Positions 42,443 to 64,000 of a stretch of 64,000 nt of DNA are shown one piece after another. Position 1 is the first letter of the stretch. The number at the start of each line of letters is the position of its first letter. The DNA lies in NCBI RefSeq assembly GCF_001194135.2, contig NC_068993.1, positions 55,542,180 to 55,606,179 on the forward strand, in the 5' to 3' direction. Under the pieces are notes generated by a model. The model ran no database searches and was not told the origin of the DNA. It was given only the letters and a program-made list of their open reading frames with translations. The position numbers and the translations under genes were made by a program. Origin of the DNA: Octopus bimaculoides. Its lineage: Eukaryota.

Positions 42443-42473
<31 letters not shown>

Positions 42474-42510
42474 GTATGTATATATACATATATATATATA
42501 TGTATATATA
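42164..42510. repeat. Compound (TG)n/(TA)n microsatellite next to a gap
   Basis: Read directly. Confidence 0.95.
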
Positions 42511-42539
42511 TTGTTGCTATTATGTTAAACTGTTGTATG

Positions 42540-42830
42540 TCAAAATTTGGCCAGATGCGTTTTTTCAATATTTATTTTTGCTTGCAATAGCCGGCTCTTT
42601 TGGTCAAATGCACTGTGTTTGATGTGAGAAAATCTTGATGGAAAACATATTCTCGATTTCCACAAATTTTTGTCTGCTCTGCAATGATTAAAACAACACA
42701 TCTGTGTACAATTACTCTGGGTGAATGTTGTGAAAAGATCAGGCTGTACAGTTGTTGTGGATGGCTCCTGTATGATTGATGTGAAGGGCAGTCAATCCCA
42801 TTCAAATTGTTGCAAGAATTACAAAAAAAC
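42540..42830 (-). mobile_element. Decayed Tc1/mariner-superfamily transposase catalytic fragment
   Basis: The reverse strand reads KICGNREYVFHQD...*ILKKRIWPNFD, resembling the YVFQQD(S/N)AP and WPxxSPD motifs. Confidence 0.5.
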
Positions 42831-44574
42831 ATGGGTGACAGGTTGACAATGATGACTGGTGTTTTTAAGAAATGCTGTTGCTATTTACTTTTTCTTAGCC
42901 TTAGGTTTGCCCTAATCCAGTAGACATATGATTAAAGGCATTCTAGCTAGTGACCATCCCATCTTATATTCAGACATAATATAGTTAAAGTAATGGTTGT
43001 CAACCTGTTGTTTTTACACTTTCTTTCTTACCCTGAATCGCATTTTACAAATGCTTTGCCACCCCATCTTTTAAAGCCCTCCCCCTCAGAAAACAACAGG
43101 TTAATTTTACACAGTAGCTTATTGTGCTTATGTTCTTGGACTCTTCCATTCAGCATGTGCTTCGTTTTGCATATTTGCATGGATTAGTGTCCCCTATGTT
43201 GAATTTTTATGGAAGATTTTTTTTTAGAAATTTTTACTAACGAAGATGAGGACTTGAATAATGAAACTATATTGGATCTTTGCACGTCATATATGCCAAT
43301 ATATACAATCATCATTGTTTAACGTCCGCTTTCCATGGACGATTTGACTGAGGACTGGTGGACCAGGTGGCTACACCAGGCTCCAATCTGATTTGGCAGA
43401 GTTTCTACAGCTGGATGCCCTTCCTAACACCAACCGTTTTACTCATTTTCTAATCCTGCCAAAGATTAAGAAAAAACCTGTCCCTTCTGCCCCCTTGTAA
43501 GCTCACTCACATTCCCCCCCACCTCAAGAGACTCTACAACCCAGGCTCAGAACTACTGATATAATATATCATTCATGTTTTTAAATAGTAAGGTGCAATT
43601 TTGGGAGCATATGGTTGTTATTTCTAGCAGGAAAAGAAACCACAAAGAAAGAGGCTTTATTAAGTATGTGTTTCTTGGTATCGTTGATTAGGTTAATCCT
43701 ATGAAGAAATAGGTTTTGTGAAAATGTTGCTTATGATAGACTAATTGGTGTCCTGTCCATGAATGATATCACAGGCAACATATCTCATTTTAATGTTATA
43801 GAATCTAGTTCTAAAAACTGTCCTTATGAGCTTCTATGACTTATTCAAACACTGTTTTATCATTTCTTTGTTAACGCTAACATTGGTGTCTTCAGATTAA
43901 ACACAAAACCAATTTTTGTGGGGGAACTATTTTTTCCATTGTTGTTGCTACTCTCATAAAACTTCAAAGATGTGAAATAAACCCTCCCCCACCCCCATAC
44001 ACACACCACAACCACCACTAAATTTAAACTCAAAACCACAAGGGATGAAACCAACAATTAAAACCTATTCAGTCCACACTATTTCAACAATGTTAGTATG
44101 TTTATAATTATATTGTTATGAAAATGTATTCTATAGTCATTTTTCATTCTAATTTATCTGAAGAATATTTTATATCCATATTTTTGTTTTCATTGGGAAA
44201 TGTTGTTTTCTTTTGAAACCAGCAATAAATACCACTCATTTATGAAGTAGGATTGGTGTATATTGTTAGCTAGGTAGACTGAGGCATGCAGCATCATGTA
44301 TGTCTAACACAAAAGCTGTAGAAAGATTTGATTTAATTTTATGGTCATCACTCAAATACTTAGACCTTTGGTCAAATACTTAACCATTTTGTCTTTAACT
44401 TGTGTACACACACACACACACACACTTCTTTAACACAATATTTAACTATCTCGTATTATACACCCACACCATCATTTTACCTCTAACGGTACAAAAACCC
44501 AAAATGAAATTCTGATAATCTAGCCAGAGATTTAATAAAGTGAGCCAGCTAGCAATTATGTAAGCCAGCAATTT

Positions 44575-44750
44575 AAGATACAGTACCAATAACAGATTAT
44601 ACAATAACAATAGCAGACTATACAGTACCAGTAATAGATTATACAATGCCATTAATTATATATTCATCACTAGTATTAGTATACAGTACCATCGAACAAT
44701 ATATGGTACCTCAATAACTGACTGTACAATAATACAGTAATACAGATAGC
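44575..44750 (+). repeat. 21-bp minisatellite (atacagtaccaataacagatt-like), about 4 clear copies then decay
   Basis: Read directly. It produces the LYNLLLV heptad ORF at 44446-44652. Confidence 0.8.
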
Positions 44751-46719
44751 ACACATAATTTTAAGGAATTCATATCCAACAAATGTTGCGTTTCACACTT
44801 TAGAAGTTGTTGACCACCAATGCTGTTTTATCTGATATATGATGTGCTGTTGTTCTGCTGTAGGCCTTATATATATTCTACGATATGCATGAGCACAGCA
44901 CTCATGGTTTCACGTAATTTTAGTGTTAGTATTTAATGTAATAAATAGTATGTGACAATTATGGAATATCCAATACTACATTCACCACACAACAAAGAAA
45001 TTGCATTAGAAGAAATGTCAGATAGTTAGTAATTTGTGAGTAAAACAAAACTGAGCAATTATAACAAAAAGCAGTCTTTTTTTTGTTTTGTTTTTTAATC
45101 ATTAGCACATATACAATCATTCTAATAGGCTGGTGCTCTTTTCTGCTCCATAAGAATTGTTTGTTGTAACTGTATTAGTTGAATTGATACATTCTCATCA
45201 TCTACTGTTTCCAAATTTATCTTTGCTGCTGTTACCGTTATTATTGTATGAACTATTGTATTTGCATAAGTGAAGGTTTGCAGTTTTCAGCAGTTATTTT
45301 AAGTTTCAAATTCAGAGTCTTGGGATAAATTGCTTGAGACTCTATCACAGCACCCTGTTGTATAGTGAATTAGAACGGCAATAGGAGAGTCTTGCAAGCA
45401 CTAGAAGGCAATGATCTAAGGTTCATTAAAGCTAGTAGTAGTTTTTCATCTCATTGCTTTACTGTCTTGTTTTGTTTATGATAAGATGTAACGGAGTAGT
45501 TTTTCCATCTCACTTCATTACAAAGTTCATTTTGTCCATTTGATTATGAAAGGCAAAGAGTCATTCTGGTCATATTATTTAAATACTTCTATTGACTTAA
45601 AAACTCCCAAATTTCAGAGCTTCAAATTGAATGCTGTGAACAGAATTTGGAGTACTGCAGCTCGTGAATATTGAGGAAAGGCATTGAATAATAGCTTGAG
45701 AAGTTTTTCTTAAGGCAAACGCAGAATGATATTCATTGAATATTGTCAGAATGTGAGAGATGCCCATGCTCGTATTTGGTTTTGGAACTACAATATCAAA
45801 TGATAGTTGCTGTCAAGATATTTTTAGGATGACATTGTAAGGTAGGTGTGAAAGATTGGATCTGGTTAGTTTTAACATAAAACAGGTAGAATAATTTGAG
45901 CCAGACATGGCTGGATTAAATGCTAAGGGATTAAATTAGTTTCCAAGTTTCATTTTTGACAAAAACTTATTTCTAAAAGGCCCTTCTACTAAGGATATAG
46001 GAAATTTATGATTTTTTAAATATGTATCCAAGGCAGCTCACTAGGCTGTTGTCCAAACTGTTGTTTCAGTGTAATCTCATTCATTGAATATCTTTTTGCT
46101 TTTAGTAAATTTAGTTACAATAGGTTTTTTTTTTTTTTTGCTCTTGAATAGTAGTAAGGTCAGCTTTGGGCTCCTCCATCTTTTGTAATTTCAGGCCACT
46201 TTCTTTCATTCTGTTAACTAGTTCCAGTATCTTCCAGATTTAATCCTTCAGCATTCAGATTACTTTGTCAAATGTAATGCTTATCAATTTCACATTTTGA
46301 ATCAGTCCTGCATTGTGTTGTAGCTTTGAGATTATGAGGATGTGGTTTTTTATTTTTAGAATGAAATTAAAAGGTGAGTGAGTGAAGCTGGATCTGATCA
46401 GTTTGAACTTAGTGGAATATTTGGGTCTGATATGGTCAGTTTGAATGCTACAGGGTTAATAAAAATATTTTGAGAAAGGGTTGGACAATAAAATGTTTGA
46501 ATCTTGTCTTTAAATGTACTTTATAATTGGTACACTTCTTTAAATTACCTGCTTTCCTCTCCACCCAAAACAACTGAAGATGCATTGTTGACATCTTCAT
46601 ACATGTCATTATAAATCCCATTACTTCAAGATTGTGAAGTTCATTTACAACCTCCCTTCTTGTATGTACTGAAACTGGGAATGCTGGACAAATTTTAGTA
46701 TTTACAATCTTTTTACTCA

Positions 46720-47070
46720 TCATCATCATTTAACGTCCATTGTCCATGCTGGCATGGGTTGGACGGTTTGACCAGGGTTGATAAGCTGAGGGGGCTGCAC
46801 CAGACTCCAGTCTGATTTGGCATTGTTTCTACGGCTGGATGCCCTTCCTAACACCAACGACTCCAAGAGTGTAATGGGTGCTTTTACATGCCACCGGCAT
46901 GGGTGCCAGTTGCATGACATCAGTATCTGCCATGACTACAATTTCACTTGGCTTGATGGGTTTTCTCAGGCACGGCATATTGCCAAAGCTCTCGGTCATT
47001 TGTCATTGCCATTTGTCATTGCCATTTGTCGAGGCCAAACACTCGAAAGATGCTTTTTACATGCCACTCA
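46720..47070 (-). mobile_element. RTE-tail repeat
   Basis: catcatcatttaacgtcc...ggatgcccttcctaacaccaac; same family as 5376. Another copy lies at 43310-43435. Confidence 0.85.
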
Positions 47071-48471
47071 CATGTTATTTACTGGAAGTAAATATTCCGA
47101 AACCTTGTAATGATGTACATTGCAGAATATCTGCACTTATTAATCTGGGGTTATAGGGGCATCTCTAGCTTTTATCAGTCAGTTAGATGATGTATGATAA
47201 TTGTAAACAGCAAATGGTAGAGTAGGCAACATCAAAAGCCAATTGCATCTGAAATGAGTGTCTAATCAACTTACAATTAACCCATGTAAATTATCATTTA
47301 TTGCACAATTAATATTCATTATTACTTCCCCATTATCAGACTGTTTAGGATGCATGGTCTTCGCATTTATGTTGTAGACAATATTTAATGGAATAACAGA
47401 GTGGAATTTACTGAAATGTCCTAGTTTACTACAATTGCTGCCATTTTGAACCTGGCTTCACTTAGTAACTAAATTCTCTTGAATAGTCCTTGCTAGTAGT
47501 GTGAAATACTTCTGTATTTAGAACAAGGTTATATTACTGATTCAAGAACAAGTATTGGATCTAGCTACATACTACAACAAGAGTAACCAAATCCGAGATG
47601 AATACATTAGGCAAAGTTCTAAGTCTGATTTCATTAATCAAAACCAATTTTGTAAACTCTGCTTCTGGATCTTCTATGATTGCAGAGAGTTTATATGAAG
47701 AAATATGTGTTTTGACCCTTAGTAGGAAATCATTAACCAGTTCTTGTATTTGCTCTAGGTCCAAAAATTCAAGCATGTTTGAGATGATAAATCTTTAGAC
47801 CCCCCCCCTCCACTTGTTTTAGTCATTGATCTATGGCCATGTTGAGGTACCACCTTGAAAGGTTTTAGTCAAACAAATCACCAACCAGTATTTATTTTTT
47901 CAGCCTGGTACTTTTTCTATCGGTCACTTTCACTGAACTGCTAAGTTATGGGAACATAAACCAACACTGGTTGTCAAGCAGTGGTGGGAGACAAACATAA
48001 TACAAACACAAAGACACACACGACAGACTTCTTTCAGTTTCTGTCGATCAAATCCACTTATAGATATAGCCTGGGGCTATAAAAGAAACCCTAAGATCAC
48101 ACAACTGGGATGTAAGGTTCTTCAGCACACAGCCACACTAACAGAACACTTTAAATTTTCAAATCCAACAAAAATTGTCATAGGACATCAGATATCTTTT
48201 CATTTGAGCATTGTGCTGGTGCCACATAAATGCATGGAATTTTGACTTAACTGTGCTTCTATTTTTTTAGTAATAAGAAGATTTAAGTGTTTCTTAGAAT
48301 CCATCTTAGTGTTGTTAGCGTATTTTTAAAGTTGTAAATCTTCACCATCAATTGTTAATGGAAAATAAAATAGACCTAGGTGGTATTTGAAATCAGAATG
48401 TAAAGAACCGGAAGAAGTGCCACTGAGTGTTTTCCTGATGTGCTGACAATTCTGCCAGTTCTCCTCTTTAA

Positions 48472-48676
48472 CCATTTAACATTCGGATTATTCTGTTAAA
48501 TGCAATGCTTAATTTATTCACATTGTTTTGAATTAATAATGAATTATTTTGTAGCTTCAAGAGTTTGATGATGGAGTTTATTTTTAGAATGACATTGTAG
48601 AGTAGGTGTGAGGGGCCAGATTTGGCCAGTTTGAGCATAAAACAAATAGAATAAAGCCTGTTTAAATGCTAAGGGG
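48472..48676 (+). mobile_element. piggyBac-like MITE with TTAA on both sides
   Basis: ttaa|ccatttaac ... tgctaagggg|ttaa. Confidence 0.75.
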
Positions 48677-49118
48677 TTAATGCATACAACAAATAATGAA
48701 ATGAAACCTCTTTGGATGATGCCTGGTGGAAGTGGTTTCCTGAAGATATATGTTCACAAATTGAAAGGTGAATGCCAATTCATATTAATCAGCTGTCAGG
48801 TTTAATGTAGGAGAATAAGATATTCTAGATTGCTGGGATCTTTCATCTTACTGTATGAAAATTTACAAAAATGAATAACAAAAAAAAAAAAAAGCTACAC
48901 AATGTGAAAGAAATTTAACGAATGCGCTCCTCATAATTTCTTTTAAGTCTGACATTGAGCCCCAACAGGACATTTGAGTTCTGACTTCAGCTGAGAATGT
49001 TTTCTGTTGAAGCCAACGTACTATGCACCCTTCTTTGCACTTGAATCTCAGATGTGAGAGAATGTTGCAAAATGTGAAGTTTATCGTGTATTTGCAAAGG
49101 TGTGGATGTGTGGTTAAG

Positions 49119-49480
49119 CAGTTTGCTTCCTAACTGTGTGGTCTTTGGTTCAGTCCCACTGTGCTACACCTTGGGCAAGTGTTTTCTGCTTATAGCCCCC
49201 ACCCCCCAGGCTGACCAAAGCCTTGTGAGTGGATCTAGTAGACAGATGTCTAATGTATGCTTCTCTCTCTTTGTATGTATGTGTGTGACTCTCACTACCA
49301 CTTGACAACTGGTGTTAGTTTGTTTATATCCATATAAAGTTCAGCGAAAGAGAGACTGATAGGATAAGTACCTGGCTTTAAAAATAAATACTGGGGTTGA
49401 ATTGTTTAAATGAATCCATTAAGTTGATGCTCCAGCATGGTTGCAATGCAATGACTAAAACAAGTAAAACATAAAAGATA
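49119..49480 (+). mobile_element. tRNA-derived SINE, family B
   Basis: tggttaag...ggttcagtccca (B-box-like)...ccttgtgagtggat...gactaaaacaagtaaa. Related copies at about 37466, 39965, 41560 and 52822 (+) and 47810-48125 (-). Confidence 0.8.
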
Positions 49481-52400
49481 TACATATGATGTTTAAACTG
49501 TACAAACAAGCTCAGTGTGCTTGTGCTGGCTAAAATGGCCACCTATTTTTTTTTTTTGTCTACATGACACTACACAATGCCAATAGCTGGCTATATAATA
49601 CCTGACAGATTATGCAATATCAATAACTCTATACAAATAATAGACGGTACAATGCCACTAACATCCTAAACAACTAATGGCAATTCATTATGCAAGTAAT
49701 GAGAAACTAAAATACACAGCATCAGGCAAAATCCAAATGAATGTATTTTGAACCATTCAAGAGGAATCTGTTGGCATTGAAATTGCTAGAAATAGCCCAC
49801 TAAAATCTTTTGGAAAAGGGCACATTGGATAATGGATAGTTACAGATAAACTATGCCTGACATGGTGGGATGGTCATTGGGGGAATGCTTTTGATCATAA
49901 GTTTGCTTGACCAGGGCTGGTCTGTGGCTAAACAATAACAATAAATGAAGATTTTGAAGTATTTCTATCCTTGTTGACAAATGGGACAATCTTGAAAAAA
50001 TTTTTTCTTAAATATTGGCCCCAAATTTAAAGTGTGCAGCTTAAGATGTGTTCAGATATTAAAATCAGATTATAAAACAACACCTAGCAAGGTTTGTCTT
50101 GTGTACATACAGTATGTTTACTAACTCCATGGCAACGTAGATGATAGTTAACTGTCAAATTAGTGAAATTAATTGTAATGAGAATGTAGTTTTCATGAAA
50201 CACCAATGACAAAATTATTGACATTTGTTTAACTCTAAATCATTGGTATTATGTCGAAATAGCATTTTTCTCCAGATTCCTTGGAGTTACTTGAGCCTGT
50301 TTCCTTCCTGTTCTAGCATGAAATAAGTAATTTCATAAAACGAATGAATTACTTGGGGTGTACTAACTTGTTCTTTGGCCAAGCTCATTTCTGCTAGAAC
50401 AAATCTATGCAGCTTTTTCGTCTATGGCTATCCTCTTGCTTTGCAAATCTAGCATAACATCCAATATATCCATCCTTTTTCAACACTGCAAGGTGTGACT
50501 TGAGGGACATTTGGCTGCTATTTCTAGTAGGTTGAGCAGCTTATGTAGGGGTCATCATTGGCTTGTTGTATATGTTGTTTTATTTGGCATCAGGCATGTA
50601 TAGTAGACCTAATCTGTCACCATCCTGGTTGTGGGTGCCTTTTATTTATTTCTTTTCTTTAGCAAATATTCTGATCAAACCTCTGGTTTGGGGAAAGATG
50701 TGCTGCTTCCATATGCAAGAACACAGGTGTTTTTCTACTCCACTCCTTGAGGCCTGCAATGTTTACAGATGCTTCCTTCGTCTTTTAACTTAAAAAGTTG
50801 TTACCTATCTTATTAAAAGCCAATGAAAGAACCTCTAAGTAGTTGCTCACCCTGCTTGAAATAGTCAAATCTCTCAAGTCACACTCTACCATCTTAAAAA
50901 AAAGGAAGGATGCATTGAATAACGTAGTCCCAGATATTAAAAGAAGGATAATTGTGACTGGAACACCTTGATCAAAGGCCTGTTCATCCAGGGCTGACCT
51001 AGTCTGAGCAACAACAAGCCAACCATGAAATAAGCAAAAATGAGCTTGTTACAAGTATAATGTATTAGTTGTTTGTGATGTATATTTGACTTAAAAGCTA
51101 GTAGCGTAGCAGTTATAATTAGTTTCTCATTTAGCTTTTTATCTTATCCCTGTTATATAGCTCCTACTTGTTCCACATCAACTAAATGTTCTGGTTTCAC
51201 TTTGTCCTATAAACTGAATTACTCTGGAATCATACCATCATTATTTATACTGGTGTTCAACTTCTGAAGATTTGTTGTGCATCTCCTGTAGATTCATTGT
51301 GCAGCTTGTGTCAGTCTGTTGTGCTAATATTTCCAACAGCTGAAGTGATTATATAGAGCAATATGAAGGGCAAATTGCAAATGCATAAGAACATGTGGAA
51401 CATCTATGTTGAGGAAAATAATGAATTTTAATTTTACAAATTCAGAGGTCTGTACCCAATCACATGGAGTAGCAGTAATTAAAATGTTAAATGGCATTAA
51501 TTAACCAGCTTGAGCTTATAATATTTTAAGTATGATACTCTGAATACCAAAACACCAAAAGTACTACGGGTGGTAGGCAAAAGTTTTAAACCTTTACTAA
51601 AGTGAAGGTGTAGAATTATGCTTGTTAAATTACAAGGTTTAGATGCATTTTTAAAAGTCACCTAGACATTTTTACCTGTGGTATCATTTGAACCTTTGTC
51701 ACAGCAAGCAATATAAATGAAGGTAGCCTTATCCAACACCCTCACTCTCCAAAAACCTATCAGAGAGAGAAGGTTGGGCAAATAATAATATGAAAGTAAT
51801 GTTAATGGCTATAATCCAGCATGGTTACAGCCAATAAGCTGGAATGGAATAAGAGGCCTCTAGTATTTGTCATAATCAGGACAGATCTTTTTTACATCAT
51901 ATACAAGGCATATTTGTTTGGCATTAAATTAATATAGAAATTTGGTTTCTATATGTATATTAACGAAAACTTATGATTTGACAAAAATAATGCAGCACTT
52001 TCACTAGACTCAGAAGTTTTCAGTTCAAAAGCTTTGACTTTTGTTAAGGATCGGGGTGGTTGAATTTCTGACCACCATGTTTAGATAATGTACATGGCTA
52101 GCAATGTCAAGCAGAAGTGTAAAATCACAGAACAATGTTTGGTCCTAATTTAGTAATGGATACACCTTCAGTATTTTTGTGATTTCTCTCTTGTTCAATT
52201 CTTTCTTTTTTTTTTTAATGAAATTAACACATTTTGTCACCACTTTCATCATGTTGCTCATTCTTAGAGAATGTGCACATACATTTCAACAATGTAAGAT
52301 GTACTATTATGCTCTTAGAATAGTATTGATAGTTCCCCAATTCTTTTTTGATCAAAGCACAAGTATTTTTGAGATCTTATAAGTGACATGTCATCCATAA

Positions 52401-54483
52401 CTGCACTACAGAGTTTTTCCTTTGGTAGGGTAGTGTTTAACACAAATCATTTATTGGTTATTTAACTTTCACTGATAATCATATACATTGATTTTTTATG
52501 CTGGTAAATCTTATATCATAAAGTTTGCTATTGTTTCATACTTCATATTTACTGTGTCTGTTGTCTTGTCTATAGTTGTTGAATAAAGCAAAAGTTTTGA
52601 TGCTGTTTCAAAAATTCTGTTTCAAGTATATTAAATATCATTAACCTTCCTCCAGGATAAACTAATGTTCTCAAAAAATCTTTCTGGGGTTAAAATTCAC
52701 ACAACCACCTGTATATTCCTTACCAAACATGCTTTCGGTGTTTAGTTTCACTTTCTATGCAGTTGGCTTATACACTTCATAACTTACTTTACATAAGTTT
52801 TTTTTATTATTAATAATACATAGGCGCAGATGTGGCTCAATGGTTAAGATTGCTGTCCAACCACATGGTTTTGGGTTCGCTATTATTATGGGCTGACCTA
52901 AGAAAGCCTTGTGAGTGAATTTGGTAGACTGAAACTTTAAAAAAAAAAAAAATTTTTTTAAACCCTGTTATGTGCATGAGTGTTTCCTTGTTTTGACATT
53001 GAATAGTAGTTGCAAGCAAGGATCACCTTCAAACAAGCAGTGTTGTTCAGTTCAGTCTTCCATAAAAAATGTTTGGCCTTGAAGAAATATTACCTTGCTG
53101 GGAAATAGGTAATGTTTGGCAATAGTAGAAACTCCGACTAACTCATGAAAACATGGAAAAGTAGACATTAACCACTCTTTTGTTACCATATTTCTGTTGA
53201 GATTCTCTGTGTTTCTTTCAGTTACTTTCCATTTTATATCAAAGCAACAGTTTTTCTTTTATTAAGTATTATCCTTTGCAGAAAGGGTCACTTACTGTTA
53301 TGTACTTAACAATATTGATATAAAATCTGTAAAAAGAATAGACAAATGAAGTGGTAAGTACTAAAAATGTTAATTAACTGTAATAAAGGTGTGACTAATA
53401 CATCTTTAAATTCATATGAATTTCAACAGTATGGTTAATATCACAAAACAAGCATTACGGTTGACAAAAATTAGTTTACTTATGGGTTGTTGAAATTATA
53501 TTAAATTACTGATTTGATCTTGATTAAACACTTTAATTTTTGTTTTGTTTTTCATGTGGGTTTTTTTAAGAACTTTCTTAGCGGACAGTTTCAAATTTTG
53601 TCTGCAGGGGATGTGTCTCTATCCTTCTCTGTCTCTTTCATCGTGTCTTGATTTCTAGCTTGGTTTCTACAAGAAGAGTATTTATTATCTTTCTGAGTTA
53701 CTGTTGGCCTTTGATGAACATAAACTATTTTAACCTAATTTCCATGTGGATTATCATTTACTGGAATTGAAAGATTGATTTCTTTGGTTAGTTTTCAGAA
53801 TTTAGAATCTCTAAAATATTTGTCTAGGTCTCAGTAAATTAATTGATTCAATCTATTTTAAATATACTTCAGATCTTTACCAATCAATTATTTATTGCTG
53901 GAAGATATTTTATTCCAAATCACTGTAGGTAGATTGCAATGTGATACATACATATATAAGGTTTGTGATTAAAGTACATGATACCTTTGGTGAGTTCAGT
54001 TAACTCTTTCACCGTCTGCAGCTGCTGACGTTTTTGTGTTATGGTTACTGCTAGACATAACAGTTTTGTTATTTCTTTTGTGTTAAACATTTTACAGTCT
54101 GCAGCCAATATTTAATTGCTACTATTAATTTAGATTTGTAGAAAGGCAAACAAAATGTCTTGGGGTACTTAGTTCCTTGTTCTGATTTCAAATCCTGTTA
54201 AAGTCAGCCTTTGCCTTTTCATTTTTCCAAAATCAATAAAAAATAAGTATCAATGAAGTTGATATAATTGACTAAACTCTTCCTTAAATTTGAAGCCTTG
54301 TACATATATAAGAAATCGTTCAATGTAATTGTTCTAATGCCATGATCTAAGTTCAGAATTTGAACTATAAAGATAGGATTTTATTCTTCAATCATTTGGA
54401 AATTTTGTTGCAGATAATGTATTGCGAGTTGATTTTATCTTAAAAGGGTTAATAAAATATAGCTAGTAATGCAATTGTTAGTC

Positions 54484-55010
54484 ACCAACATTAGCAGTTA
54501 CTAATAGCTAGCATTGCTTGTTGATAAAAAAAAAGAAAAAAAAGACAAGCGTTGCCAGTTGATACTCACTAGTATTGCTATTTGATACTTACCAACATTG
54601 TTAGTTACACTTGCTGGCTTTGCCACTTATATTTACAGCATTGTTGTTTGATACTAGCTAGCAATGCTAGTTAATAGTCAACAACATTGCATTTACTGAT
54701 AAAACTAACTAGTTTTGCCAACTAACAACACAAGTTGTTATTACCGGTTGATACTTCTAAGCTTAAGCACTTTGATACTTGGCAACACTAGTTGATTGTT
54801 ATGACATCTGTTTGATATTTACTAGCATTTGCCAGCTGCTATTCTGTACTGTTGATATAAGCTGGTATTACCAGTTAATAGTTGCTCTCATATCCAATGG
54901 AAACATTACCAATTACCAGATAAATATTTGCTAGCCTTGCCAGTTGAATATTAGCCAGCATTGCTTGTTGATCCTCACGAGCGTTGCCAATTGTTTACTA
55001 GCTTGCATAG
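54484..55010 (+). repeat. Degenerate minisatellite of about 22-23 bp (gcattgccagttgatacttacta-like)
   Basis: ttgccagttgatac / tagcattg fragments recur with regular spacing. Confidence 0.7.
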
Positions 55011-55424
55011 CTGTTATTAAAAAATGCTTTGTATGAGATCTTCCTTAACTTTTAAAATACAAATTTAATTTCTGTGGTAATAGTGTAATTATACTGTACT
55101 AACAATCCATTACAGTACTTCAATTACAGTGTCTTATATAGTACTTTAGTTACATGTTGGTACTTTATATCTCATCAACTGTCTTGTAAATTAGTTCACT
55201 ATTTATTGTAAGGCAGTGAAGGGTGTATATAATCTTGTAGTAAATGGACTGAATCTTGGCCAAATTCCTTGATAAACCACAGTAGACTCTATCACCTGGT
55301 GTTAATCGCAATGGTTAAATAATGAATATACTAGTAGAGAATAATGAAATGTAATGTCCAAGTGTATCAATGTATCAGTCTCGTTTGTGGGTTTTCTGTT
55401 TGTAATATGTAAGCATTTGTTCAA

Positions 55425-55602
55425 AATGTTTTGTGGTATTTCATCCACCTTTACTTTCTGAGTTCAAAATTCCACTGAGGTTGACTTTGCCTTTCATCCT
55501 TTTGGTTTCGATAAAATAAGTACCAGTTGAATGCTGGGGGGTCAATGTAATCGACTTATCCCCTACCCCAGACTTGCTGGCCTTGTGCCAAAATTTGAAA
55601 CC
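55425..55602 (+). mobile_element. tRNA-derived SINE, family A
   Basis: gagttcaaaattccactgaggttgactttgcctttcatcc...ccttgtgccaaaatttgaaacc. Confidence 0.8.
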
Positions 55603-57240
55603 ATTAGGTGTGCATTTGTTATTCTCATAAAATATTGAATTATTTTTCACCTCTGCTTAGAAAGCAGTGTGTTATTGTCAAAAGAAGTCACCGAATTGAT
55701 CTGAGGGTGTTTTTGAATTCTGCCAATGGTCTTCTGGCCATTAGAAGAGAATAGAACTAACAATACACTCCATCTGATAAATTTTCTTGGTTTGAAATTG
55801 ATGGCAAATGCATACATATAAAAAAAGTGAATGCATTAAAATGAATGGAGAGAGACAATGAGATATGAATTATTTCTGAAGAGGTTTATTTTTAAAGAAA
55901 TAATCATTTTGTGAATCTTTTTAGTCTTAACAATTTGGAGAAAATAATTAAGATTTCTAATGAAAATTGATGTCTGTTGTCATTGTTTTAAAATAACCAA
56001 CTTGAGGCTCATTAGTCAGAAATCTGTCTGTACAAGCCATATAATAATATTTCACTAGATTATCCTGCAAATCTGTAGCACAGTGTAAATGGTAAGCTGT
56101 TATCAGTATTGAAGTTTCCATTTGAAGTTACAGTCATTGACTTTGAGGAAGATGTGATTGTCTTAACCATCAACTCTCCCTAAAACTTTTACACTTCATG
56201 CCTTGTTGGCAGTGGGTAACCACTCCAGTGAACAAAGTTTTCCTTGAGACATTGGATATAGAATCACAATAAACTGAATTCCTTCTTGTTTCAGGAAGTA
56301 ACATCTATATCAGATTTTAAATCAAATTTCCTTCATTAACAGCTCTCTAATTAAAACATGATTTATTCAAACATTAATTCATATAAATGATAAAGAAGCA
56401 ACATTAGAGTAATCAAGTGATCTGAAAAAGTCCAGTTATGAAGTTATACTATGGGAATATCAGGTTCGTAGACTTGTGTTTGAGGGCATATTGAGGAGGG
56501 TGTAAGAGTTTCAAGCAAGTTAGCAACATACTTTGAGAATTCCAGCTGTAATGAAATTAACCAAACATTAGAATTGAATGATCACAAAGCAACAACAAAA
56601 GCAGGTCTATGAAATTGTCATAAAATTCACCAGAGACCAGAGTTATCTCTAAATTAGTTTTCATATTTGCGGTAAAATTAGTCCATGGCATTACAGATTA
56701 GGGATTAGATAAAGAAGGAAGCATGTTTAACCCTTTATGACCTTGTTTCTAGTGAAAAACACTCAGTATGTTTCGGTTAATTTTGATAATAATAGAAAAA
56801 ATATGGAAGCGTTTTGTAGAATAACAATTTAGCTGTAAGCAAGCTGGTGTTTGGAGCCTAACTTATCAAAAAGTTCTTGTATATAATAGTGATGGATGGT
56901 TTTAATTTAGATATGAACTCTTGGAAATCCTAGAAACAGATGCCACTCAGATGGATTGCTAAGAAAAGAGTGATGTCAGGTTCTACAACTAAACTTTTAC
57001 CAAGTTTTTGATAATGATAATAATAATAATAATAATAATAATAATTGGTTGTGCCTTTTAGTTTTGGTTTGTGCCTTATTCTTTGGTTCATAAAAGAATC
57101 AATCTATACAGGAGAATAGCTATCCAAACTAATGTAGCCATGTTCATTTGTTTTTATGTCTGTCTTTTTATGCCTGCATGAGTTAGATGAATATATTATT
57201 GAGGCATTGTTTTATAGCCAGATGACGTTCCTGTTGTTAC

Positions 57241-57276
<36 letters not shown>

Positions 57277-57626
57277 GGTGTGGTGGTGGTGGTGGTAATA
57301 ATGGATAAGGCTGATCTATGTATGATATTGTTTTTAAAATCTTCAGAAGCAAGCCTTACAACCTCATTTACTCACGTGAAAAGCAATTTATAAGTAAAGA
57401 ATGTTTATGTATTTAAAAAGTAACAAAACTTGTCTATTTGATATTTTGAAATTAGTTAAGTAGTTGTCTGTTGATAAGGTTGGTAATATGGTTATATTAT
57501 CTCATTTTTTTGTATTTCTAAATATTGAAACTCATGTTGTTGGGTCAGTTCAGCTCTTAATGGGCTGCGCCTTCACACTTGTTGGAGTATCTATATTGAT
57601 AACCTATTAGCTATTTGGTTCTCTGA

Positions 57627-57990
57627 GAGGCTGTGGTAAGAAGTTTGTTTCCCAACCACATAGACTGTGTCGCACTTTGGCCAAGTGTCTTGTACTGTAG
57701 TCTTGGGCTGACTAAAGCTTTGTGTGTGGGTTTGAAAGAAGTCCATCACATACATATATATGTGTGTGTGTGTGCGTGTGCATTGTTATGTTTGTCCTCA
57801 CTACCATTTGACATCAGTGTTGGTTTGTTCACATCCCCATGATTTAGTGGTTTGAGTGGGTTGGCAAAAAGAGACCAGTAGAATAAGACTTTAAAAAAAA
57901 AATGCAACAAGTACTGGGCCCAGTTTAGTTGAGTAAAACTTATCAACACAGTGCCCCCAGCACTGCCACAATCCACTGAAACAAATAAAA
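57627..57990 (+). mobile_element. tRNA-derived SINE, family B
   Basis: ggctgtggtaagaag...cccaaccaca...gactgaaacaaataaa-type end. Confidence 0.8.
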
Positions 57991-58085
57991 TATAAAGATA
58001 CCGGTTCAGCTCTCTCTCTCACTCTGCTCCCTCTCTCCCTCTTTCTCTCTCTCTCTCTGCTCTCCGCATCCCATTTGCTCTTTAA

Positions 58086-58305
58086 CCCTTTAATGTTCAG
58101 ATTACTCTGTTAAATGTAATTCCTTTTCACTCAAATTGTTTTGAATTAATCATGCATTATCTCATTGCTTTGAAATCTCAATGATGTGATTATTTATTTT
58201 TAGAATGTCAATGTGGGTTTGGTGTGAGAGGCTAGATGTGGCTAGTTCAAATATAAAACATGTAGAATATTTGGGCCGGATATGGCCGGTTTAAACACTA
58301 AAGGG
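58086..58305 (+). mobile_element. Complete piggyBac-like MITE
   Basis: TTAA at 58082-58085 and 58306-58309; termini ccctttaa / ctaaaggg. Confidence 0.8.
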
Positions 58306-58498
58306 TTAATGATTATTAAGTAAAATTATTATTGCTTGTTTTAAAGCTCTTTTAATCATTTTGAGGTATTGTAAAGATTGTTTTTGTTTGCATTGAATTC
58401 TAAGTATGTCTTTCTCTTGTTCCTTCCACTTGTAGGTTTTTTGTGTTGCTATTATTGCCATAGCTGTTCCTGTGTAAGCAGCAGGATCATTGTACAGT

Positions 58499-58588
58499 AT
58501 GACAAGTGAAGACAGTCCAATAATGACTGCCCCACCACCTCAGCCACCCCCAGTTTATCCACAGGACAATGTGCAAATGTTACAAAAT
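58499..58588 (+). CDS. SMARCA4: Brahma/SMARCA2/4 first coding exon (exon 58436-58588; MTSEDSPIMTAPPPQPPPVYPQDNVQMLQN)
   Basis: Acceptor ttccacttgtag, an in-frame TAA upstream of ATG 58499, and donor AAT|GTAAGT in phase 0. YPQDN...MLQN joins AINSMEEKGMQDDPRY, matching the recalled human SMARCA4 YPQDNMHQMHK|PMESMHEKGMSDDPRY and fly brm QENLHALQRAIDSMEEKGLQEDPRY. Confidence 0.88.
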
Positions 58589-58675
58589 GTAAGTATCTCA
58601 ACTGCCAAATCTTTCTTTGCTATTTGTTGAAATCAGCAACAACAGAATCTTGATTTACCTTACATATATATAGGC

Positions 58676-59020
58676 ACAGGCATGGCTGTGTGGCAGGAAG
58701 CTCGCTTCTTAACCACATGGTTCCAGGTTCAGTCCCACTGTGTGGCACCTTGGGCAAATGTCTTTTACTATAGCATTGGGCCAACCAAAACCTTGTGAGT
58801 GGATTTGGTAGACGGAAACTGAAAGAAGTCTGTTGTGTATATATATATATATATATAAGTATATATTTCTTTGTGTCTGTTTGTCTTCCCCTCCTCCTCC
58901 ATCACTTGACAACTAGTGTTGGTGTGTTTGCATCCTTGTAACTTAGCAGTTCAGCTAAAATGACTGATAAAATAAGTACCAGGTTTACAAAATGAGTACT
59001 GGGGTCAATTCATTCAACTA
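58676..59020 (+). mobile_element. tRNA-derived SINE, family B
   Basis: A-box-like tggctgtgtgg and B-box-like ggttcagtccca, full body. Confidence 0.85.
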
Positions 59021-59259
59021 ATATATATATATATATATATATATGTACATATATGGTGTTCCATCTAAATTTGATTTTTTTTTTATATCTCCTTTTTTTT
59101 CAAGCACAGTTTGGATGTATTGGTGAAAAATTAACAATTAGAAAGCATAAAGATTAAAGTTATAGCCGAGAAAAAGTTGGCTGACATGGAGGACTGGAAG
59201 CCATTTCAATATTCTTTCCTACTCGAGGCACAAGGCCTGAAACTTTGGGGGGAGGGCCA

Positions 59260-59293
<34 letters not shown>

Positions 59294-59456
59294 NNNNNNN
59301 NNNNNNNNNNNNNNNNNNNNNNNNNNNNNNNNNNNNNNNNNNNNNNNNNNNNNNNNNNNNNNNNNNNNNNNNNNNNNNNNNNNNNNNNNNNNNNNNNNNN
59401 NNNNNNNNNNNNNNNNNNNNNNNNNNNNNNNNNNNNNNNNNNNNNNNNNNNNNNNN

Positions 59457-59509
<53 letters not shown>

Positions 59510-60178
59510 GATAGTTGTCCACTTGTGACTGAGGAGGGCCATCACTGGCCATTGCCCATGCAGTGTTTCAACAATGTCTGTGCATGTGATTATTGCACTT
59601 GTGGTCAGCTTAACTCGGATTCACTCCTACAGCTTCCATGCTCGCCGTGGTGCCCTCCTACTCATCCTCACTGGCGATTGCACAAACTAAAATTTTAGGT
59701 CCAATGTCTTGCACATCTCACAGATCCTCTCCACTCCATTGGTATGATCCAGAGACACGCCATTGCAAGATATCCAGTGCCAATAAGGTTGCAGGCTCAG
59801 GAATGTGAGAATGCCATGATCTCAACACAAGCACTAGATCCGCAAAATGTTCATACACACACATACATATGAAAAAATAATTCAGATGAGATTTTGGCTT
59901 TTTTTTGCTTTCTAATTGTTAATTTTTCACCAATACATCCAAACTGTGCTTGAAAAAAAGGAGACATAAAAAAAAAAATCAAATTTAGATGGAACACCAT
60001 ATATGTACATATATATATATATAGTTGAATGAATTGACCCCCAGTACTCATTTTGTAAACCTGGTACTTATATAATCAGTCATTTTAGCTGAACTGCTAA
60101 GTTACAAGGATGCAAACACACCAACACTAGTTGTCAAGTGATGGAGGAGGAGGGGAAGACAAACACAGACACAAAGAA
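58867..60178. repeat. Inverted duplication with arms of about 280 bp (58867-59151 and 59902-60178)
   Basis: The arms are reverse complements by eye apart from a few substitutions and TA-tract length. They include non-SINE flank. Confidence 0.9.
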
Positions 60179-60407
60179 GGTAAATCAACACATAGTTGTT
60201 GAATATCAAGAAAATATATTGGTCTTGTGACTTGAGAATTGTGATCTCTGCTGCGAATTTGTCACCACTGGGAATGTGTCTTTGTGTTAGTGAGTTGGAT
60301 CTTTAATGTCACAAGCTGTGGCTGGCTAAGCACCAATTTTCAGAGCCCCTTATACTTTTATTATCATAAAAGTTGAGTTTGTAATTTTCTTTGGCTGTTT
60401 GAAATAT

Positions 60408-60610
60408 TTGCATTGAATTCTAAATATGCATTTCCCTTTTCTTTGCCACTTGTAGGTATTTTGTGTTGCTATTATTGCCATAGCTGTTCCTGTATAAGTA
60501 GCAGGATCATTGTACAGTATGACAAGTGAAGACAGTCCGATAATGACTACCCCACCACCTCAGTTTTACTCCTAGTTTATCCCCAGGACAATGTGCAAAT
60601 GTTACAAAAT
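60408..60610 (+). pseudogene. Degenerate direct duplicate of the Brahma start exon (pseudo-exon from 60456)
   Basis: Aligns to 58388-58588. Acceptor and ATG (60519) are intact, a 2-nt insertion patch gives TAG at 60573-60575, and the donor is replaced (aaaat|tttaac). Confidence 0.88.
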
Positions 60611-61498
60611 TTTAACAGCATTATTAAGAGTTTACTTACGAGCTACTAAGTTTGTAGAAGTAGTAGTTAGTACAAACTTTGTAAGAGATTTATTAGTATT
60701 TAGTATCTAATATGTTGCACAATTCAACACATGCCAGGTTGTTGACTCCTGTTAATGGAGATCAATTTGTTAGCATTTGGACTACCCACCCCACCTACAT
60801 TTTTCCTAGAGACATTGACCTAAGCTGGCTATCAGTTACCACTATCACTAGGCTAGAAGAGCCTTCAAAGATTGTACATAAGTTCTCTTCTGCCTTTAAC
60901 TAATTTATTTTTAAAAAAAGAGAGAATTTATAAGCAAATTAGATTTTTATTGTTTTTAATGATATCGCAATTGAAAGGATAAATGTGTTTATTGTATGTT
61001 TTTTACCTGAGGAAGAGGAAAGGAGCTAGCTGTTTTCAAGTATAAGTAAAAGATTTAAAATATTCAATATCAACCTGCTCAAGACTGCCCCTGGTTCAAT
61101 GATACAAGCTCCCTGTTTTAAAATATCATTTTAAACACTAGCGTAAAAATGACTGAGCTATTTTACTAAATTCTTCATTATTTTCAAAATTAATTGAAAT
61201 AAAGGCAGTGTGTTTCAGCAGAAATATGGTAACAAAAGAGTTAATAAATTTGCTATTTATTTTATAGACTCTCCATGTATCAGCAAAGTAGTAAATATAT
61301 TACAAGGGCTTCGTATAGGAGAGTAGTGAGTAATTTTCAGAAACAAAAGACAATGTTAATCTTGTGAAATTTGAGTGTGTTGTAACTTAATAGACTTTTT
61401 GTATTATGTTACCCAGTCCCCCTGCTCTGTTGCCCTTCCTGTTGCTCATTTTTAAATACTTGATGTTAATGTCTTCTGCTTTGTGTCTTCTTGTACAG

Positions 61499-62057
61499 GC
61501 TATTAATTCAATGGAAGAGAAAGGCATGCAGGATGACCCTCGATACTCTCACCTAGTGATAATTGCAAATCGAACCAAGGGAGTGGTGAGTGGAGGAGGA
61601 GGTAATGGCACTGCAAGTGGTCCTGGATCACAGGGTTCGACAGGCCCTCCTAATATGGGTGGCCCAGGCCAAGGAATGGGTATGAGTGGACCGGGCATGA
61701 CACCTGGAAACAATATGAATGGACCAAATATGAACAACTCAAACAGCAACATGTCGAACTCTAATATGGCCGGACCAAATGGTGGAAACATGAACAGTGG
61801 AATGGGGGGTAATCCTTCATCTGGTACCGGTGTAGGTGCTGCTGGATCAGGTAACCCACCCAATGTCTATGCCAATATGCAAGGACCTAATTCATGTGGT
61901 CCACCTGGGATGAATGGGCCGGCCATGAACAATATGTCCGGACCTAATAATGCTATGGTTGCAAACATGAATTCCAATATGAATGGTCCACCTGGACCCC
62001 CAAATTCCTCTGGAGCTAATCAGCAAGCTATTGAAACCAGTGAACAAGGACCACAAG
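61499..62057 (+). CDS. SMARCA4: Brahma/SMARCA2/4 second coding exon; EKGMQDDPRY motif followed by a G/N/M/P-rich low-complexity region
   Basis: Acceptor gtcttcttgtacag, donor AAG|GTAAGT in phase 1, 186 open codons. The gene continues beyond the window. It is probably the co-ortholog of SMARCA2 and SMARCA4 (brm). Confidence 0.92.
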
Positions 62058-62980
62058 GTAAGTGCTTATATTTATTTTTATATAACACACACACACACAC
62101 ACACATACACACATATATATGTTCACCATGTTGGACCACTGAACTCAACACGTTTTTTTTCATTCTCTTCCTATTTATTTCCTCTTATTCCTTTCTGTTG
62201 AAGAGCGTACGCTCGAAATGTAAAAGACTTTCTCATTTTTCCCAACCATCAAACTAATGCACTTGCTTGTTGTTCCTATACCTGTCTTTGTCTTTGTTAT
62301 ATATATANNNNNNNNNNNNNNNNNNNNNNNNNNNNNNNNNNNNNNNNNNNNNNATATATTTAACATAGTGTAATTCAAGAAACTTGAGACATAAAATATA
62401 AATAACTTTACAGATATTTATTTGAAAGTTTTAATTATGCTTTTGTTTCCTTGAAACATAATTGCATATCTTAAAGTCTTTGAGATGCTGTACCACTATT
62501 CTTCAGCTACCAAGAAAACTTTCTCTCTAAATTGTTATGCGTATGTCAGTAGCTTATTAAGATATAGCATTAACAGTTACCTTGATGTGTTTTATATTAG
62601 TTGAAATATATATAATGTAGATAACTGTACAGCTATTTATTTGAAAGCCTTATTTGTGGAGAGAATAATTGAGTAACTTACAGATAATTTTTTGGGGGAC
62701 AGTTGTCCCTTGTCAGAGATGTGCCACAGAGAACTTTTAATCTAAATTACTCTTTAGTTTTTTTTTTGTATGTGTATTTTTAAAACTTTCCTTTGATTTT
62801 CTTGTGTTTTATTTAAAAAAAAAATTTATTGATGTATTCAGCTGGTGTTTGCAATACAATTCAACTAAAAGGGGTTTACATAAAACTAACACAAACTTCT
62901 TGCTTGAAAACTTCCTTTAATTAAAGGTAATAACAGGTAGTGAAATTAAACTTGGTATTAAAATTACTGGTGCAGGAAGT

Positions 62981-63530
62981 CACCGAGCTGGCAGAATCGT
63001 AAGCATGCTGGGCAAAATGCATAGTGGCATTTCATTCGTTTTTACACTCTGAGTTCAAATTCTACCAAGATTGACTTTGTCTTTTATCCTTTTGGGGTCA
63101 ATAAAATAAGTACCAGTTGAGCGCTGGGGTCAATGTATTTGACTTTACACTCTCCCCGGAATTAGTGGCCTTGTGCCAAAGTTTGAAACCAAAATTACTA
63201 GGTGCCAGTATGGCTGTGTGGTAAGAAGTTTGCATCCCAACCACATGGTTCTGCATTCAGTCCCACTGCATTGCACCTTTGGCAAGTGTCTTCTATTATA
63301 CGCTTGGGTCAACCAAATTCTCATGAGTGGATTTGGTAGACGGAAACTGAAAAAAGCCTTTAAATGATGACGATGATGATACACACACACACATATCAGT
63401 GTGTGTGTGTGTCTTTGTGTTTGCCTCATGCCTCTGCATGACATCTGGTGTTGGTGTGTTTACATCCCCATAACTTACCAGTTCTGCAAAAGCAACTGAT
63501 GGAATAAGTACCAAGCTTTAAAAAGAATAA
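62981..63530 (+). mobile_element. Adjacent SINE family A (62981-63190) and family B (63208-63530) copies
   Basis: Same diagnostic motifs as the other copies. Confidence 0.8.
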
Positions 63531-63544
63531 TAAAGAAAGACTTG

Positions 63545-63720
63545 TTCACACTTCCATAGCCTTCTTTGCTTCATGCTACAGCTGATACCTAAAATATCCA
63601 AGGTTTTTTCGCAGCTCCTTGTGCCTCGTTGTTCATGCATGCTGACTTCACGCATCCAGCAAAGCCCACTTGCTTCGTTTCTTTCTAGCCTTTACATATC
63701 CCTCACATTCTGCACTTAAT
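63545..63720 (-). mobile_element. RTE LINE C-terminal ORF fragment
   Basis: The reverse strand reads RLERNEASGLCWMREVSMHEQR, the RTE RLERNEASMLRWMC motif. Confidence 0.75.
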
Positions 63721-64000
63721 GTCTTGCTAACCTGATATATCACAATCTGTACCCTTCACTCAGAAAGTTGTTGTTTTGCTCCAAGTGAGTCTCGATCCAG
63801 CAGATATACAATCAAAGGCACTCCTGTCTTGACTCTTTCATTTCATGTGTCTAGGACCACATCTTTGTGTCCTTCCTGTTTTAATATGGTTGGATGTGAT
63901 TTGGGGGAATTTGGCAGCTTTTACTAGCATACTAGTAGACTATGTAAGTGCATAGAGGCTCTGTTGTGTCCAGAGAAATAGCAGCTGCTTGATCAGTTTC

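What the first reader, a model, noticed from the sequence alone, without database searches (positions are those of the whole stretch)
58388..60610. The Brahma start exon has a downstream decoy copy: acceptor and ATG kept, donor lost, early stop
Seen: 60408-60610 duplicates 58388-58588 with about 6 exon substitutions and a 2-nt insertion patch, so it is not a simple assembly echo. It keeps ccacttgtag, the 5' UTR and the ATG, encodes only MTSEDSPIMTTPPPQFYS*, and lacks GTAAGT. AATAAA occurs downstream at 61198 and 61243. Inference: the duplicate offers a second near-identical 3' splice site. It could act as a poison or alternative terminal exon after the true exon, or replace it to give a uORF-led or N-truncated message. 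That would be a built-in dosage valve on a dosage-sensitive SWI/SNF ATPase.
Basis: partly seen in the sequence, partly recalled or inferred. Interest (0 to 1): 0.75.

Follow-up and report, generated by a model that had tools for sequence, protein, structure and literature searches.

The report
Dead intronic copy of Brahma start exon
A 204-base piece holding the splice acceptor and start-codon exon of a Brahma/BRG1-type chromatin remodeller gene was copied once into the next intron; the copy has no splice donor and a broken reading frame, and it looks like an ordinary decaying leftover, not a built-in dosage control.

Summary
58385-58588 and 60405-60610 are a direct repeat of about 205 aligned columns at 90.7% identity (blastn E 4e-75). 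It is the only such pair in the window, and the flanks are unrelated. Copy 1 is the real start-codon exon (58436-58588, ATG 58499, 30 codons, donor AAT|GTAAGT). Its product joins the exon at 61499-62057, and the joined peptide aligns across that junction with N-termini of Brm/BRG1 relatives. Copy 2 therefore lies inside the intron 58589-61498.

Copy 2 keeps a strong acceptor, the UTR and the ATG. It has a 2-nt insertion (MTSEDSPIMTTPPPQFYS*) and no donor. The assembly gap lies in intronic (CT)n, so reading frame is not an issue. Copy 2 and the next exon share one contig, so copy 2's intronic position does not depend on the gap. The spacing and relative orientation of the two copies do.

Nothing supports a dosage valve. 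AATAAA occurs at chance density, no usable donor follows copy 2, and the divergence pattern fits neutral decay of copy 2. RNA evidence and cross-species conservation could not be tested because no close relative is in any collection.

One oddity remains: homology stops exactly at the last exon base.

Verdict: a real, probably silent pseudo-exon. Interest is low.

The parts
58385..58435 (+). Copy 1, intron part: candidate branch site (TTCTAAG), pyrimidine tract and acceptor TAG of the true start-codon exon
   Evidence: 85% pyrimidine in -23..-4, followed by TAG.
58436..58588 (+). Copy 1: true start-codon exon, 153 nt. 5'UTR 58436-58498 with an in-frame TAA at 58475-58477; ATG at 58499; 30 codons MTSEDSPIMTAPPPQPPPVYPQDNVQMLQN; phase 0; donor AAT|GTAAGT
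   Evidence: donor 7.5 bits. The product aligns with Brm/BRG1 N-termini.
58589..61498 (+). Intron between the start-codon exon and the next coding exon (about 2.9 kb, length depends on the gap estimate). It holds everything listed below down to the AATAAA hexamers
   Evidence: The junction 58588|61499 is inferred from ungapped protein alignments that cross it.
58674..59005 (+). Interspersed SINE-like repeat in the intron. Other copies lie at 63210-63524, 49094-49397 and 57632-57852
   Evidence: No tRNA or Rfam match.
58867..59151 (+). Left arm of the inverted repeat. It starts inside the SINE-like repeat and runs into unique sequence
   Evidence: 4 mismatches in 273 aligned bases, with indels in the (TA)n and T runs.
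59262..59508 (.). (CT)n microsatellite interrupted by the assembly gap 59294-59456
   Evidence: CT repeats on the same strand on both edges; list of gaps.
59902..60178 (-). Right arm of the inverted repeat
   Evidence: predicted duplex with the left arm, -438 kcal/mol.
60405..60455 (+). Copy 2, intron-derived part: pyrimidine tract and acceptor TAG retained (85% pyrimidine). 6 substitutions and 2 indels against copy 1
   Evidence: Sites this strong occur only 0.19 times per kb in the window.
60456..60610 (+). Copy 2, exon-like part, 155 nt. ATG at 60519, 2-nt insertion at 60564-60565, stop TAG at 60573-60575. No donor; followed by TTTAAC
61198..61248 (+). Two AATAAA hexamers (61198-61203 and 61243-61248), at background density
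   Evidence: 77 in the window, 1.23 per kb.
61499..62057 (+). Next coding exon, 559 nt: AINSMEEKGMQDDPRYSHLVIIANRTKG... Acceptor CAG, donor AAG|GTAAGT
   Evidence: (donor 11.9 bits). Homology.

Best explanation
Copy 2 is a real and fairly old local duplicate, about 8% diverged, of a 204-nt block. The block comprises the last 51 nt of the upstream intron (pyrimidine tract and acceptor) plus the whole 153-nt start-codon exon of a Brahma/BRG1-type SWI/SNF ATPase gene. It was inserted in the same orientation about 1.8 kb downstream, inside the intron that follows that exon.

The duplicate stops at the last exon base, so it never had the 5' splice site. It has since gained a 2-nt insertion and 16 substitutions.

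Inferred: with no nearby donor it cannot be defined as an exon, so the spliceosome joins 58588 to 61499 and removes copy 2 with the intron. Copy 2 is then a neutral, decaying pseudo-exon. At most, occasional use of its acceptor would give a message that reads ...LQNVFCVAIIAIAVPV* and would be an expected target of nonsense-mediated decay.

Shown here: the anatomy, the gene identity, the productive junction, the absence of a donor, and the divergence pattern. Inferred: that copy 2 is silent, and how it arose. The mechanism of origin is unknown.
For: - Repeat and sharp borders.
- Productive path copy 1 -> 61499. The joined peptide YPQDNVQMLQN|AINSMEEKGMQDDPRY aligns without a gap to 30 relatives in the representative library (alignment). 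It also aligns to a 1,714-aa protein with the domains QLQ-HSA-BRK-SNF2-Helicase_C-SnAC-Bromodomain (E 6e-12), and to the human SMARCA4 N-terminus as I remember it (E 3e-11).
- No donor. The 9-mer at the copy-2 exon end scores -12.5 bits against 7.5 (copy 1) and 11.9 (next exon). The best GT in 60456-61498 scores 6.1 bits at 61326, and the window background at that level is 2 per kb.
- Premature stop in every way of using copy 2.
- Divergence: intron part 6/50 substitutions plus 2 indels, 5'UTR 3/63, CDS 7/90 plus a 2-nt insertion. The intron:exon ratio of about 2 is what neutral drift of copy 2 predicts when only copy 1's exon is constrained. 13 transitions to 3 transversions looks like real evolutionary change, not sequencing error.
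- AATAAA at chance density.
- No Rfam family or tRNA in the region.
Against: - Copy 2's acceptor is still strong and is rare for this sequence: 0.19 such sites per kb, and 85% pyrimidine against 75% at the true acceptor. It is transcribed about 1 kb before the true acceptor, so some use is plausible.
- The last 10 nt before the exon are identical in both copies. At 12% divergence this has about a 28% chance of happening without selection.
- The divergence test has little power (Fisher p = 0.23).
- No RNA data and no genome of a close relative could be reached, so silence and neutrality are inferred, not shown.
- The exact coincidence of the 3' border with the exon end is not explained by a random DNA breakpoint.
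Confidence: 0.7

Rival explanations
1. Regulated decoy. The copy-2 acceptor competes with the true acceptor. Using it gives either a premature-stop message degraded by NMD or, with the downstream AATAAA, a short terminated transcript. Either outcome would tune the output of a dosage-sensitive remodeller.
For: - Intact strong acceptor, rarer than background.
- A premature stop 14 codons after the junction.
- Two AATAAA hexamers downstream.
- The inverted repeat could fold the pre-mRNA so that the donor and the decoy acceptor are only about 556 nt apart.
Against: - AATAAA is at chance density and no donor is present.
- The acceptor module is the most diverged part of the repeat, and the overall pattern fits neutral drift.
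- Decoy exons as defined experimentally need both splice sites: mutating the GT of the decoy's 5' splice sites abolished the effect (PMC6097662).
- No expression or conservation evidence of any kind.
Confidence: 0.1
2. Assembly artefact. The two copies are haplotypes or paralogous reads wrongly placed in tandem, or the scaffold join across the gap is wrong.
For: The copies lie on different contigs separated by an N gap. A nearly perfect inverted repeat straddles that gap, a structure that often goes with assembly trouble.
Against: - Identity is only 91% and is confined to 204 nt. The flanks on both sides are unrelated, whereas haplotigs would be about 99% identical over their whole overlap.
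- Copy 2 lies in the middle of its contig, 948 nt from the gap and 888 nt upstream of the next exon on that same contig. It is therefore intronic whatever happens at the gap.
- Both gap edges are (CT)n on the same strand, which is consistent with one long microsatellite.
- The two arms of the inverted repeat differ by indels and have unique flanks.
- The transition-rich substitutions look evolutionary.
Confidence: 0.07
3. RNA-templated origin. This concerns how copy 2 arose, not what it does. The block would have been copied from a splicing intermediate whose 3' end is the freed 5' exon, with the upstream intron still attached, and inserted at a break in its own intron by reverse transcription or RNA-templated repair.
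For: Homology ends exactly at the last exon base while 51 nt of the upstream intron are included. A random DNA breakpoint would fall within 1 nt of the junction only about 1-2% of the time (my estimate).
Against: - No target-site duplication, no poly(A) and no retroelement recognisable next to it.
- The 5' border does not coincide with the candidate branch site.
- It is a single post-hoc coincidence.
Confidence: 0.12

Closest known systems
Remnants of tandem or local exon duplication, the raw material of mutually exclusive exons (Kondrashov & Koonin 2001 and Letunic et al. 2002 from my own knowledge; PMC5740500 and PMC5224494 were listed but not read)
   Same: A same-strand duplicate of an exon together with its acceptor, lying in the adjacent intron of the same gene.
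   Different: Functional duplicated exons keep both splice sites, their length and their reading frame. This copy has no donor, is 2 nt longer, and contains stop codons. It also duplicates the 5'UTR and start codon, which cannot serve as an interchangeable coding cassette.
Decoy exons that promote intron retention (SF3B1, OGT, ARGLU1; PMC6097662, PMC7373989)
   Same: A non-coding exon-like element inside an intron longer than 1 kb, with a good 3' splice site that could engage the upstream donor unproductively.
   Different: Those decoys have both splice sites, and mutating the 5' splice sites abolished their activity. They are also ultra-conserved. Copy 2 has no 5' splice site, and its conservation is unknown.
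Poison cassette exons and NMD-coupled alternative 3' splice sites
   Same: Using the copy-2 acceptor would introduce a premature stop (VFCVAIIAIAVPV*).
   Different: There is no downstream donor to make a cassette, and no evidence of use or of the conservation typical of regulated poison exons.
Intronic pseudoexons and cryptic splice sites (for example the DMD pseudoexon literature, PMC7650627; listed, not read)
   Same: Exon-like intronic sequence that is normally ignored because one splice signal is missing. It is one mutation away from being included.
   Different: Ordinary pseudoexons arise by chance or from transposable elements. This one arose by copying a real exon of the same gene.

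Membership tests
Brm/BRG1 (SMARCA2/4-type) SWI/SNF ATPase gene | Conserved N-terminal motif (YPQDN..LQ.AI.SMEE.G.Q.DPRY) lying upstream of the QLQ domain | tested here: met
   30 relatives match, with invariant L28 Q29 M35 E36 E37 G39 Q41 D43 P44 R45 L49. QLQ follows the motif in P0013, P0009 and P0035. E 6e-12 against P0035. E 3e-11 against the remembered human SMARCA4 N-terminus.
Brm/BRG1 (SMARCA2/4-type) SWI/SNF ATPase gene | QLQ, HSA, BRK, SNF2 ATPase, SnAC and bromodomain encoded by the same gene | not testable with these tools
   The window ends at 64000, and no QLQ-like frame lies in 62058-64000. The architecture was seen only in the relative P0035.
Decoy exon (in the sense of PMC6097662) | Functional 3' and 5' splice sites on the decoy | tested here: not met
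   The acceptor is present. No donor: -12.5 bits at the exon end, and the best downstream GT scores 6.1 bits 870 nt away.
Decoy exon (in the sense of PMC6097662) | Strong cross-species conservation, and retention of the host intron | not testable with these tools
   No close relative in any collection, and no RNA data.
Poison cassette exon | Bounded by usable 3' and 5' splice sites, and introduces a premature stop when included | tested here: not met
   Premature stop yes. 5' splice site absent.
Alternative terminal exon / intronic polyadenylation | 3' splice site followed by a functional poly(A) signal | tested here: inconclusive
   AATAAA at 61198 and 61243, but the background is 1.23 per kb, so about 1.1 is expected in the 888 nt. 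3'-end reads cannot be tested here.
Mutually exclusive / tandemly duplicated functional exons | The duplicate keeps the length, the reading frame and both splice sites | tested here: not met
   2-nt insertion, stop at 60573, no donor.
Processed retrocopy or template-switch chimera | Lacks introns; poly(A) tail; target-site duplication | tested here: not met
   It contains 51 nt of the upstream intron. No exon-3 sequence follows it, and there is no poly(A) and no direct repeat longer than 6 nt at the flanks.
Recursive splice site | AG|GT junction that regenerates a strong 5' splice site | tested here: not met
   TAG|GTATTT. The regenerated AAT|GTATTT scores -0.5 bits.

The most novel reading that the evidence does not exclude
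The block was copied from RNA. The template would be a splicing intermediate ending at the freed 3' end of the start-codon exon, with its upstream intron still unspliced, reinserted into the gene's own intron. This would explain why homology stops at the very last exon base. The resulting donor-less but strong acceptor, brought close to the true donor by the 285-bp intronic hairpin, would be used at a low regulated level as an NMD-coupled brake on Brm output.
Probability: 0.05. Interest if true: 0.6.

Novelty: new member of a known kind. Interest (0 to 1): 0.2.

Why it matters
If the ordinary reading holds, its use is practical. Gene predictors and RNA-seq aligners can mis-assign reads or call a false first coding exon at 60456-60610, so the 16 copy-specific substitutions should be used to separate the two copies.

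It is also a clean example of how a duplicated exon can be tolerated in an essential, dosage-sensitive gene. A full copy with a donor would insert an in-frame stop (GTT TTT ... GTG TAA) into every message. Only a copy without a donor can persist.

If copy 2 turned out to be used and conserved, it would be an unusual self-derived NMD or termination switch on a SWI/SNF ATPase. Nothing seen here points that way.

Tried and rejected
- Close relatives to test conservation. The search for homologous proteins found only a distant fragment, P0001 (60% identity). Its contig L001 has only the 3' part of the next exon, and no start exon within 10 kb upstream. An exact-pattern scan of the metagenome contigs found nothing. 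The search for related loci found one distant, intron-less match, L002. No test of conservation was possible.
- The PDB sequence search gave only chance hits to asparaginases (E of 0.16 or worse), which did nothing for gene identity.
- Extended homology beyond the repeat, on either side: none.
- Retrocopy signs (exon-3 sequence after copy 2, target-site duplication, poly(A)): none.
- Recursive splice site: rejected.
- Rfam and tRNA scans of 56-64 kb: nothing above chance.
- Folding the left arm alone was uninformative (z -1.1).
- Literature on octopus SMARCA4 exons: nothing relevant.
- Pfam on other long open frames in the window: no hits.
- The donor scores use a position weight matrix recalled from memory, so they are only rough rankings.

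Full report
**Observation.** Reading 57800-61500 and searching for repeats show a direct repeat, 58387-58588 against 60407-60610. A blastn of 57000-62500 against the whole window gives 205 columns, 90.7% identity and E 4e-75. It is the only match of this sequence in the 64 kb.

A global alignment places the borders at 58385/60405 and 58588/60610. It counts 16 substitutions (13 transitions, 3 transversions) and 4 gap columns. The gap columns include a 2-nt insertion inside the patch CCACCCCCAG -> TTTTACTCCTAG.

Both copies have ccacttgtag|G. Copy 1 continues into GTAAGT and copy 2 into TTTAAC. Copy 2's ATG (60519) opens MTSEDSPIMTTPPPQFYS, followed by a TAG stop at 60573-60575. AATAAA is at 61198 and 61243.

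**The gap.** The N run 59294-59456 lies between (CT)16 and (CT)26 on the same strand. The simplest reading is one long microsatellite that the assembler could not cross. It lies in an intron, so reading frame is not an issue.

Copy 1 is on contig 42164-59293. Copy 2 is on contig 59457-62307, which also carries the next coding exon (gap list). Copy 2 is therefore 888 nt upstream of that exon whatever the gap hides. Only the 2,020-nt spacing and the relative orientation of the two copies depend on the scaffold.

A haplotype or echo artefact is unlikely.
- Identity is 91% and is limited to 204 nt.
- The flanks on both sides are unrelated: Smith-Waterman scores equal the shuffle means.
- The substitutions are transition-rich.

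**What the gene is, and which copy is used.** Copy 1 is a 153-nt exon (58436-58588). Its 5'UTR has an in-frame TAA at 58475-58477, the ATG is at 58499, and 30 codons end in phase 0 before AAT|GTAAGT. An open frame at 61394-62254 contains an exon from the acceptor CAG|G at 61499 to the donor AAG|GTAAGT after 62057.

The joined product MTSEDSPIMTAPPPQPPPVYPQDNVQMLQN|AINSMEEKGMQDDPRYSHLVIIANRTKG... matches 30 proteins at E <= 0.001 in the 1.84-billion representative library. Most of these matches run straight across the junction (alignment).
- Two of the relatives, P0013 and P0009, carry a QLQ domain just after the motif.
- P0035 belongs to the same 90% cluster as the hit P0024. Another member of that cluster is named by its source as a SWI/SNF-related regulator of chromatin, subfamily A.
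- P0035 has the domains QLQ, HSA, BRK, SNF2, Helicase_C, SnAC and bromodomain. It aligns to the window product with E 6e-12.
- The human SMARCA4 N-terminus, as I remember it, aligns 18/39 across the same junction.

So the gene is a Brm/BRG1-type ATPase. The conserved message joins 58588 to 61499, and copy 2 lies inside the intron 58589-61498. The species could not be identified, because no collection holds a close relative.

**Anatomy of copy 2.** It contains the last 51 nt of the upstream intron (candidate branch site, pyrimidine tract, TAG) and the whole exon. It ends at the very last exon base.

Its acceptor is still strong: 85% pyrimidine in -23..-4, TAG, and no AG in the exclusion zone. 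Only 12 sites in the window reach that level, or 0.19 per kb. The true downstream acceptor has 75% pyrimidine.

It has no donor. With a rough position weight matrix recalled from memory, the equivalent 9-mer scores -12.5 bits, against 7.5 for copy 1 and 11.9 for the next exon. The best GT anywhere between copy 2 and the true acceptor scores 6.1 bits at 61326. That score occurs about twice per kb in this window.

Joining copy 1 to the copy-2 acceptor reads ...LQNVFCVAIIAIAVPV*. The same stop explains why a complete duplicate with a donor could not be tolerated in an essential gene.

**Function.** The evidence offered for a terminal exon is two AATAAA hexamers. The window has 77 of them on this strand, 1.23 per kb, so about 1.1 is expected in the 888 nt downstream of copy 2.

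The divergence pattern is as follows.

| Part of the repeat | Substitutions | Indels |
|---|---|---|
| Intron-derived part | 6 of 50 | 2 indel columns |
| 5'UTR | 3 of 63 | none |
| Coding part | 7 of 90 | 2-nt insertion |

The intron:exon ratio of about 2 is expected if copy 2 drifts neutrally along its whole length while copy 1 is constrained only in its exon. The test is weak (Fisher p = 0.23), but it gives no hint that the copy-2 acceptor is preserved. The pyrimidine tract is in fact the most changed segment.

Decoy exons as defined experimentally need both splice sites: mutating the GT of the decoy's 5' splice sites abolished intron retention (PMC6097662). Copy 2 fails that defining feature. 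It also fails the definitions of a poison cassette, a mutually exclusive exon, a recursive splice site (regenerated 5' splice site -0.5 bits) and a processed retrocopy.

The best-supported account is a donor-less pseudo-exon that exon definition ignores and that leaves with the intron. I put this at about 0.7. A regulated NMD or termination switch remains possible at about 0.1, because the acceptor is intact and is transcribed first. Only RNA data and related genomes can settle it.

**Unexplained points.**
1. Homology stops exactly at the exon/intron junction. Nothing further matches, even after allowing for insertions. A random DNA breakpoint would do this perhaps 1-2% of the time (my estimate). 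An RNA template ending at the freed 5' exon would explain it, but there is no target-site duplication, poly(A) or neighbouring retroelement.
2. A younger inverted repeat, 58867-59151 against 59902-60178, straddles the gap.
   - It has 4 mismatches in 273 aligned bases, against 16 in 203 for the direct repeat (Fisher p = 0.0008).
   - Its left arm starts inside a SINE-like repeat and runs on into unique sequence, so it is a local inverted duplication and not two insertions of a transposable element.
   - Its outer ends lie 279 nt after the true donor and 277 nt before the copy-2 acceptor.
   - In the pre-mRNA the arms could form a duplex of about 285 bp (-438 kcal/mol). I cannot say whether that matters.

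**Novelty and score.** Intronic remnants of exon duplication and pseudoexons are well known, and this is one more instance, in a notable gene. Its practical value is for annotation and read assignment. Interest is 0.2.

Noticed in passing
window 58867-59151 and 59902-60178: A nearly perfect inverted repeat of about 285 nt straddles the assembly gap inside the Brm intron. It has 4 mismatches, with indels only in the (TA)n and T runs. The predicted duplex is -438 kcal/mol. The outer ends are placed almost symmetrically: 279 nt from the true donor and 277 nt from the copy-2 acceptor. It would make a long intronic double-stranded RNA.
   Followed up: partly
window 24000-36000: The CpG observed/expected ratio is 0.6-1.15 here, against 0.06-0.3 in most of the rest of the window, including the Brm exons. 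This may be an unmethylated domain that holds the promoter and non-coding first exon of the gene, or it may be intergenic DNA. The region is also full of CT/TC and TA/CA microsatellites.
   Followed up: no
window 58078-58310; also 48464-48653, 46239-46460, 38911-38684, 7352-7132: An interspersed repeat family of about 230 nt (70-76% identity between copies) ends 75 nt upstream of the duplicated block.
   Followed up: no
window 2969-3373, 5434-5742, 46790-47107 (+): Three open frames begin with nearly the same peptide (LRTGEPGGCTRLQSDLAKFLQLDALPNASHSKSVV.AFTCHRHEGQSGGTGN...). They are probably copies of another repeat element. None has a Pfam match.
   Followed up: partly
window 8128-8769 (+): A 214-codon open frame rich in Ser, Asp and Asn, with no Pfam match. 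It could be an exon of an upstream gene or a chance frame.
   Followed up: partly
window 59515: The only other strong acceptor-like site in the intron (CTCTCTCATGATAG|T) is created by the (CT)n microsatellite at the right edge of the gap.
   Followed up: no
L001 10073-10315 and 18764-19639: This is a distant relative's contig (ENA ERZ21867824). It holds only the last 73 codons' worth of the window's 559-nt exon as a separate exon, so the exon structure differs between the two species. A reverse-transcriptase-like open frame lies 8 kb downstream.
   Followed up: partly
window 58309-58539 and 60353-60559 (- strand): Both copies are also free of stop codons on the opposite strand for 77 and 69 codons. 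This is most likely a by-product of their similarity. It was not examined further.
   Followed up: no
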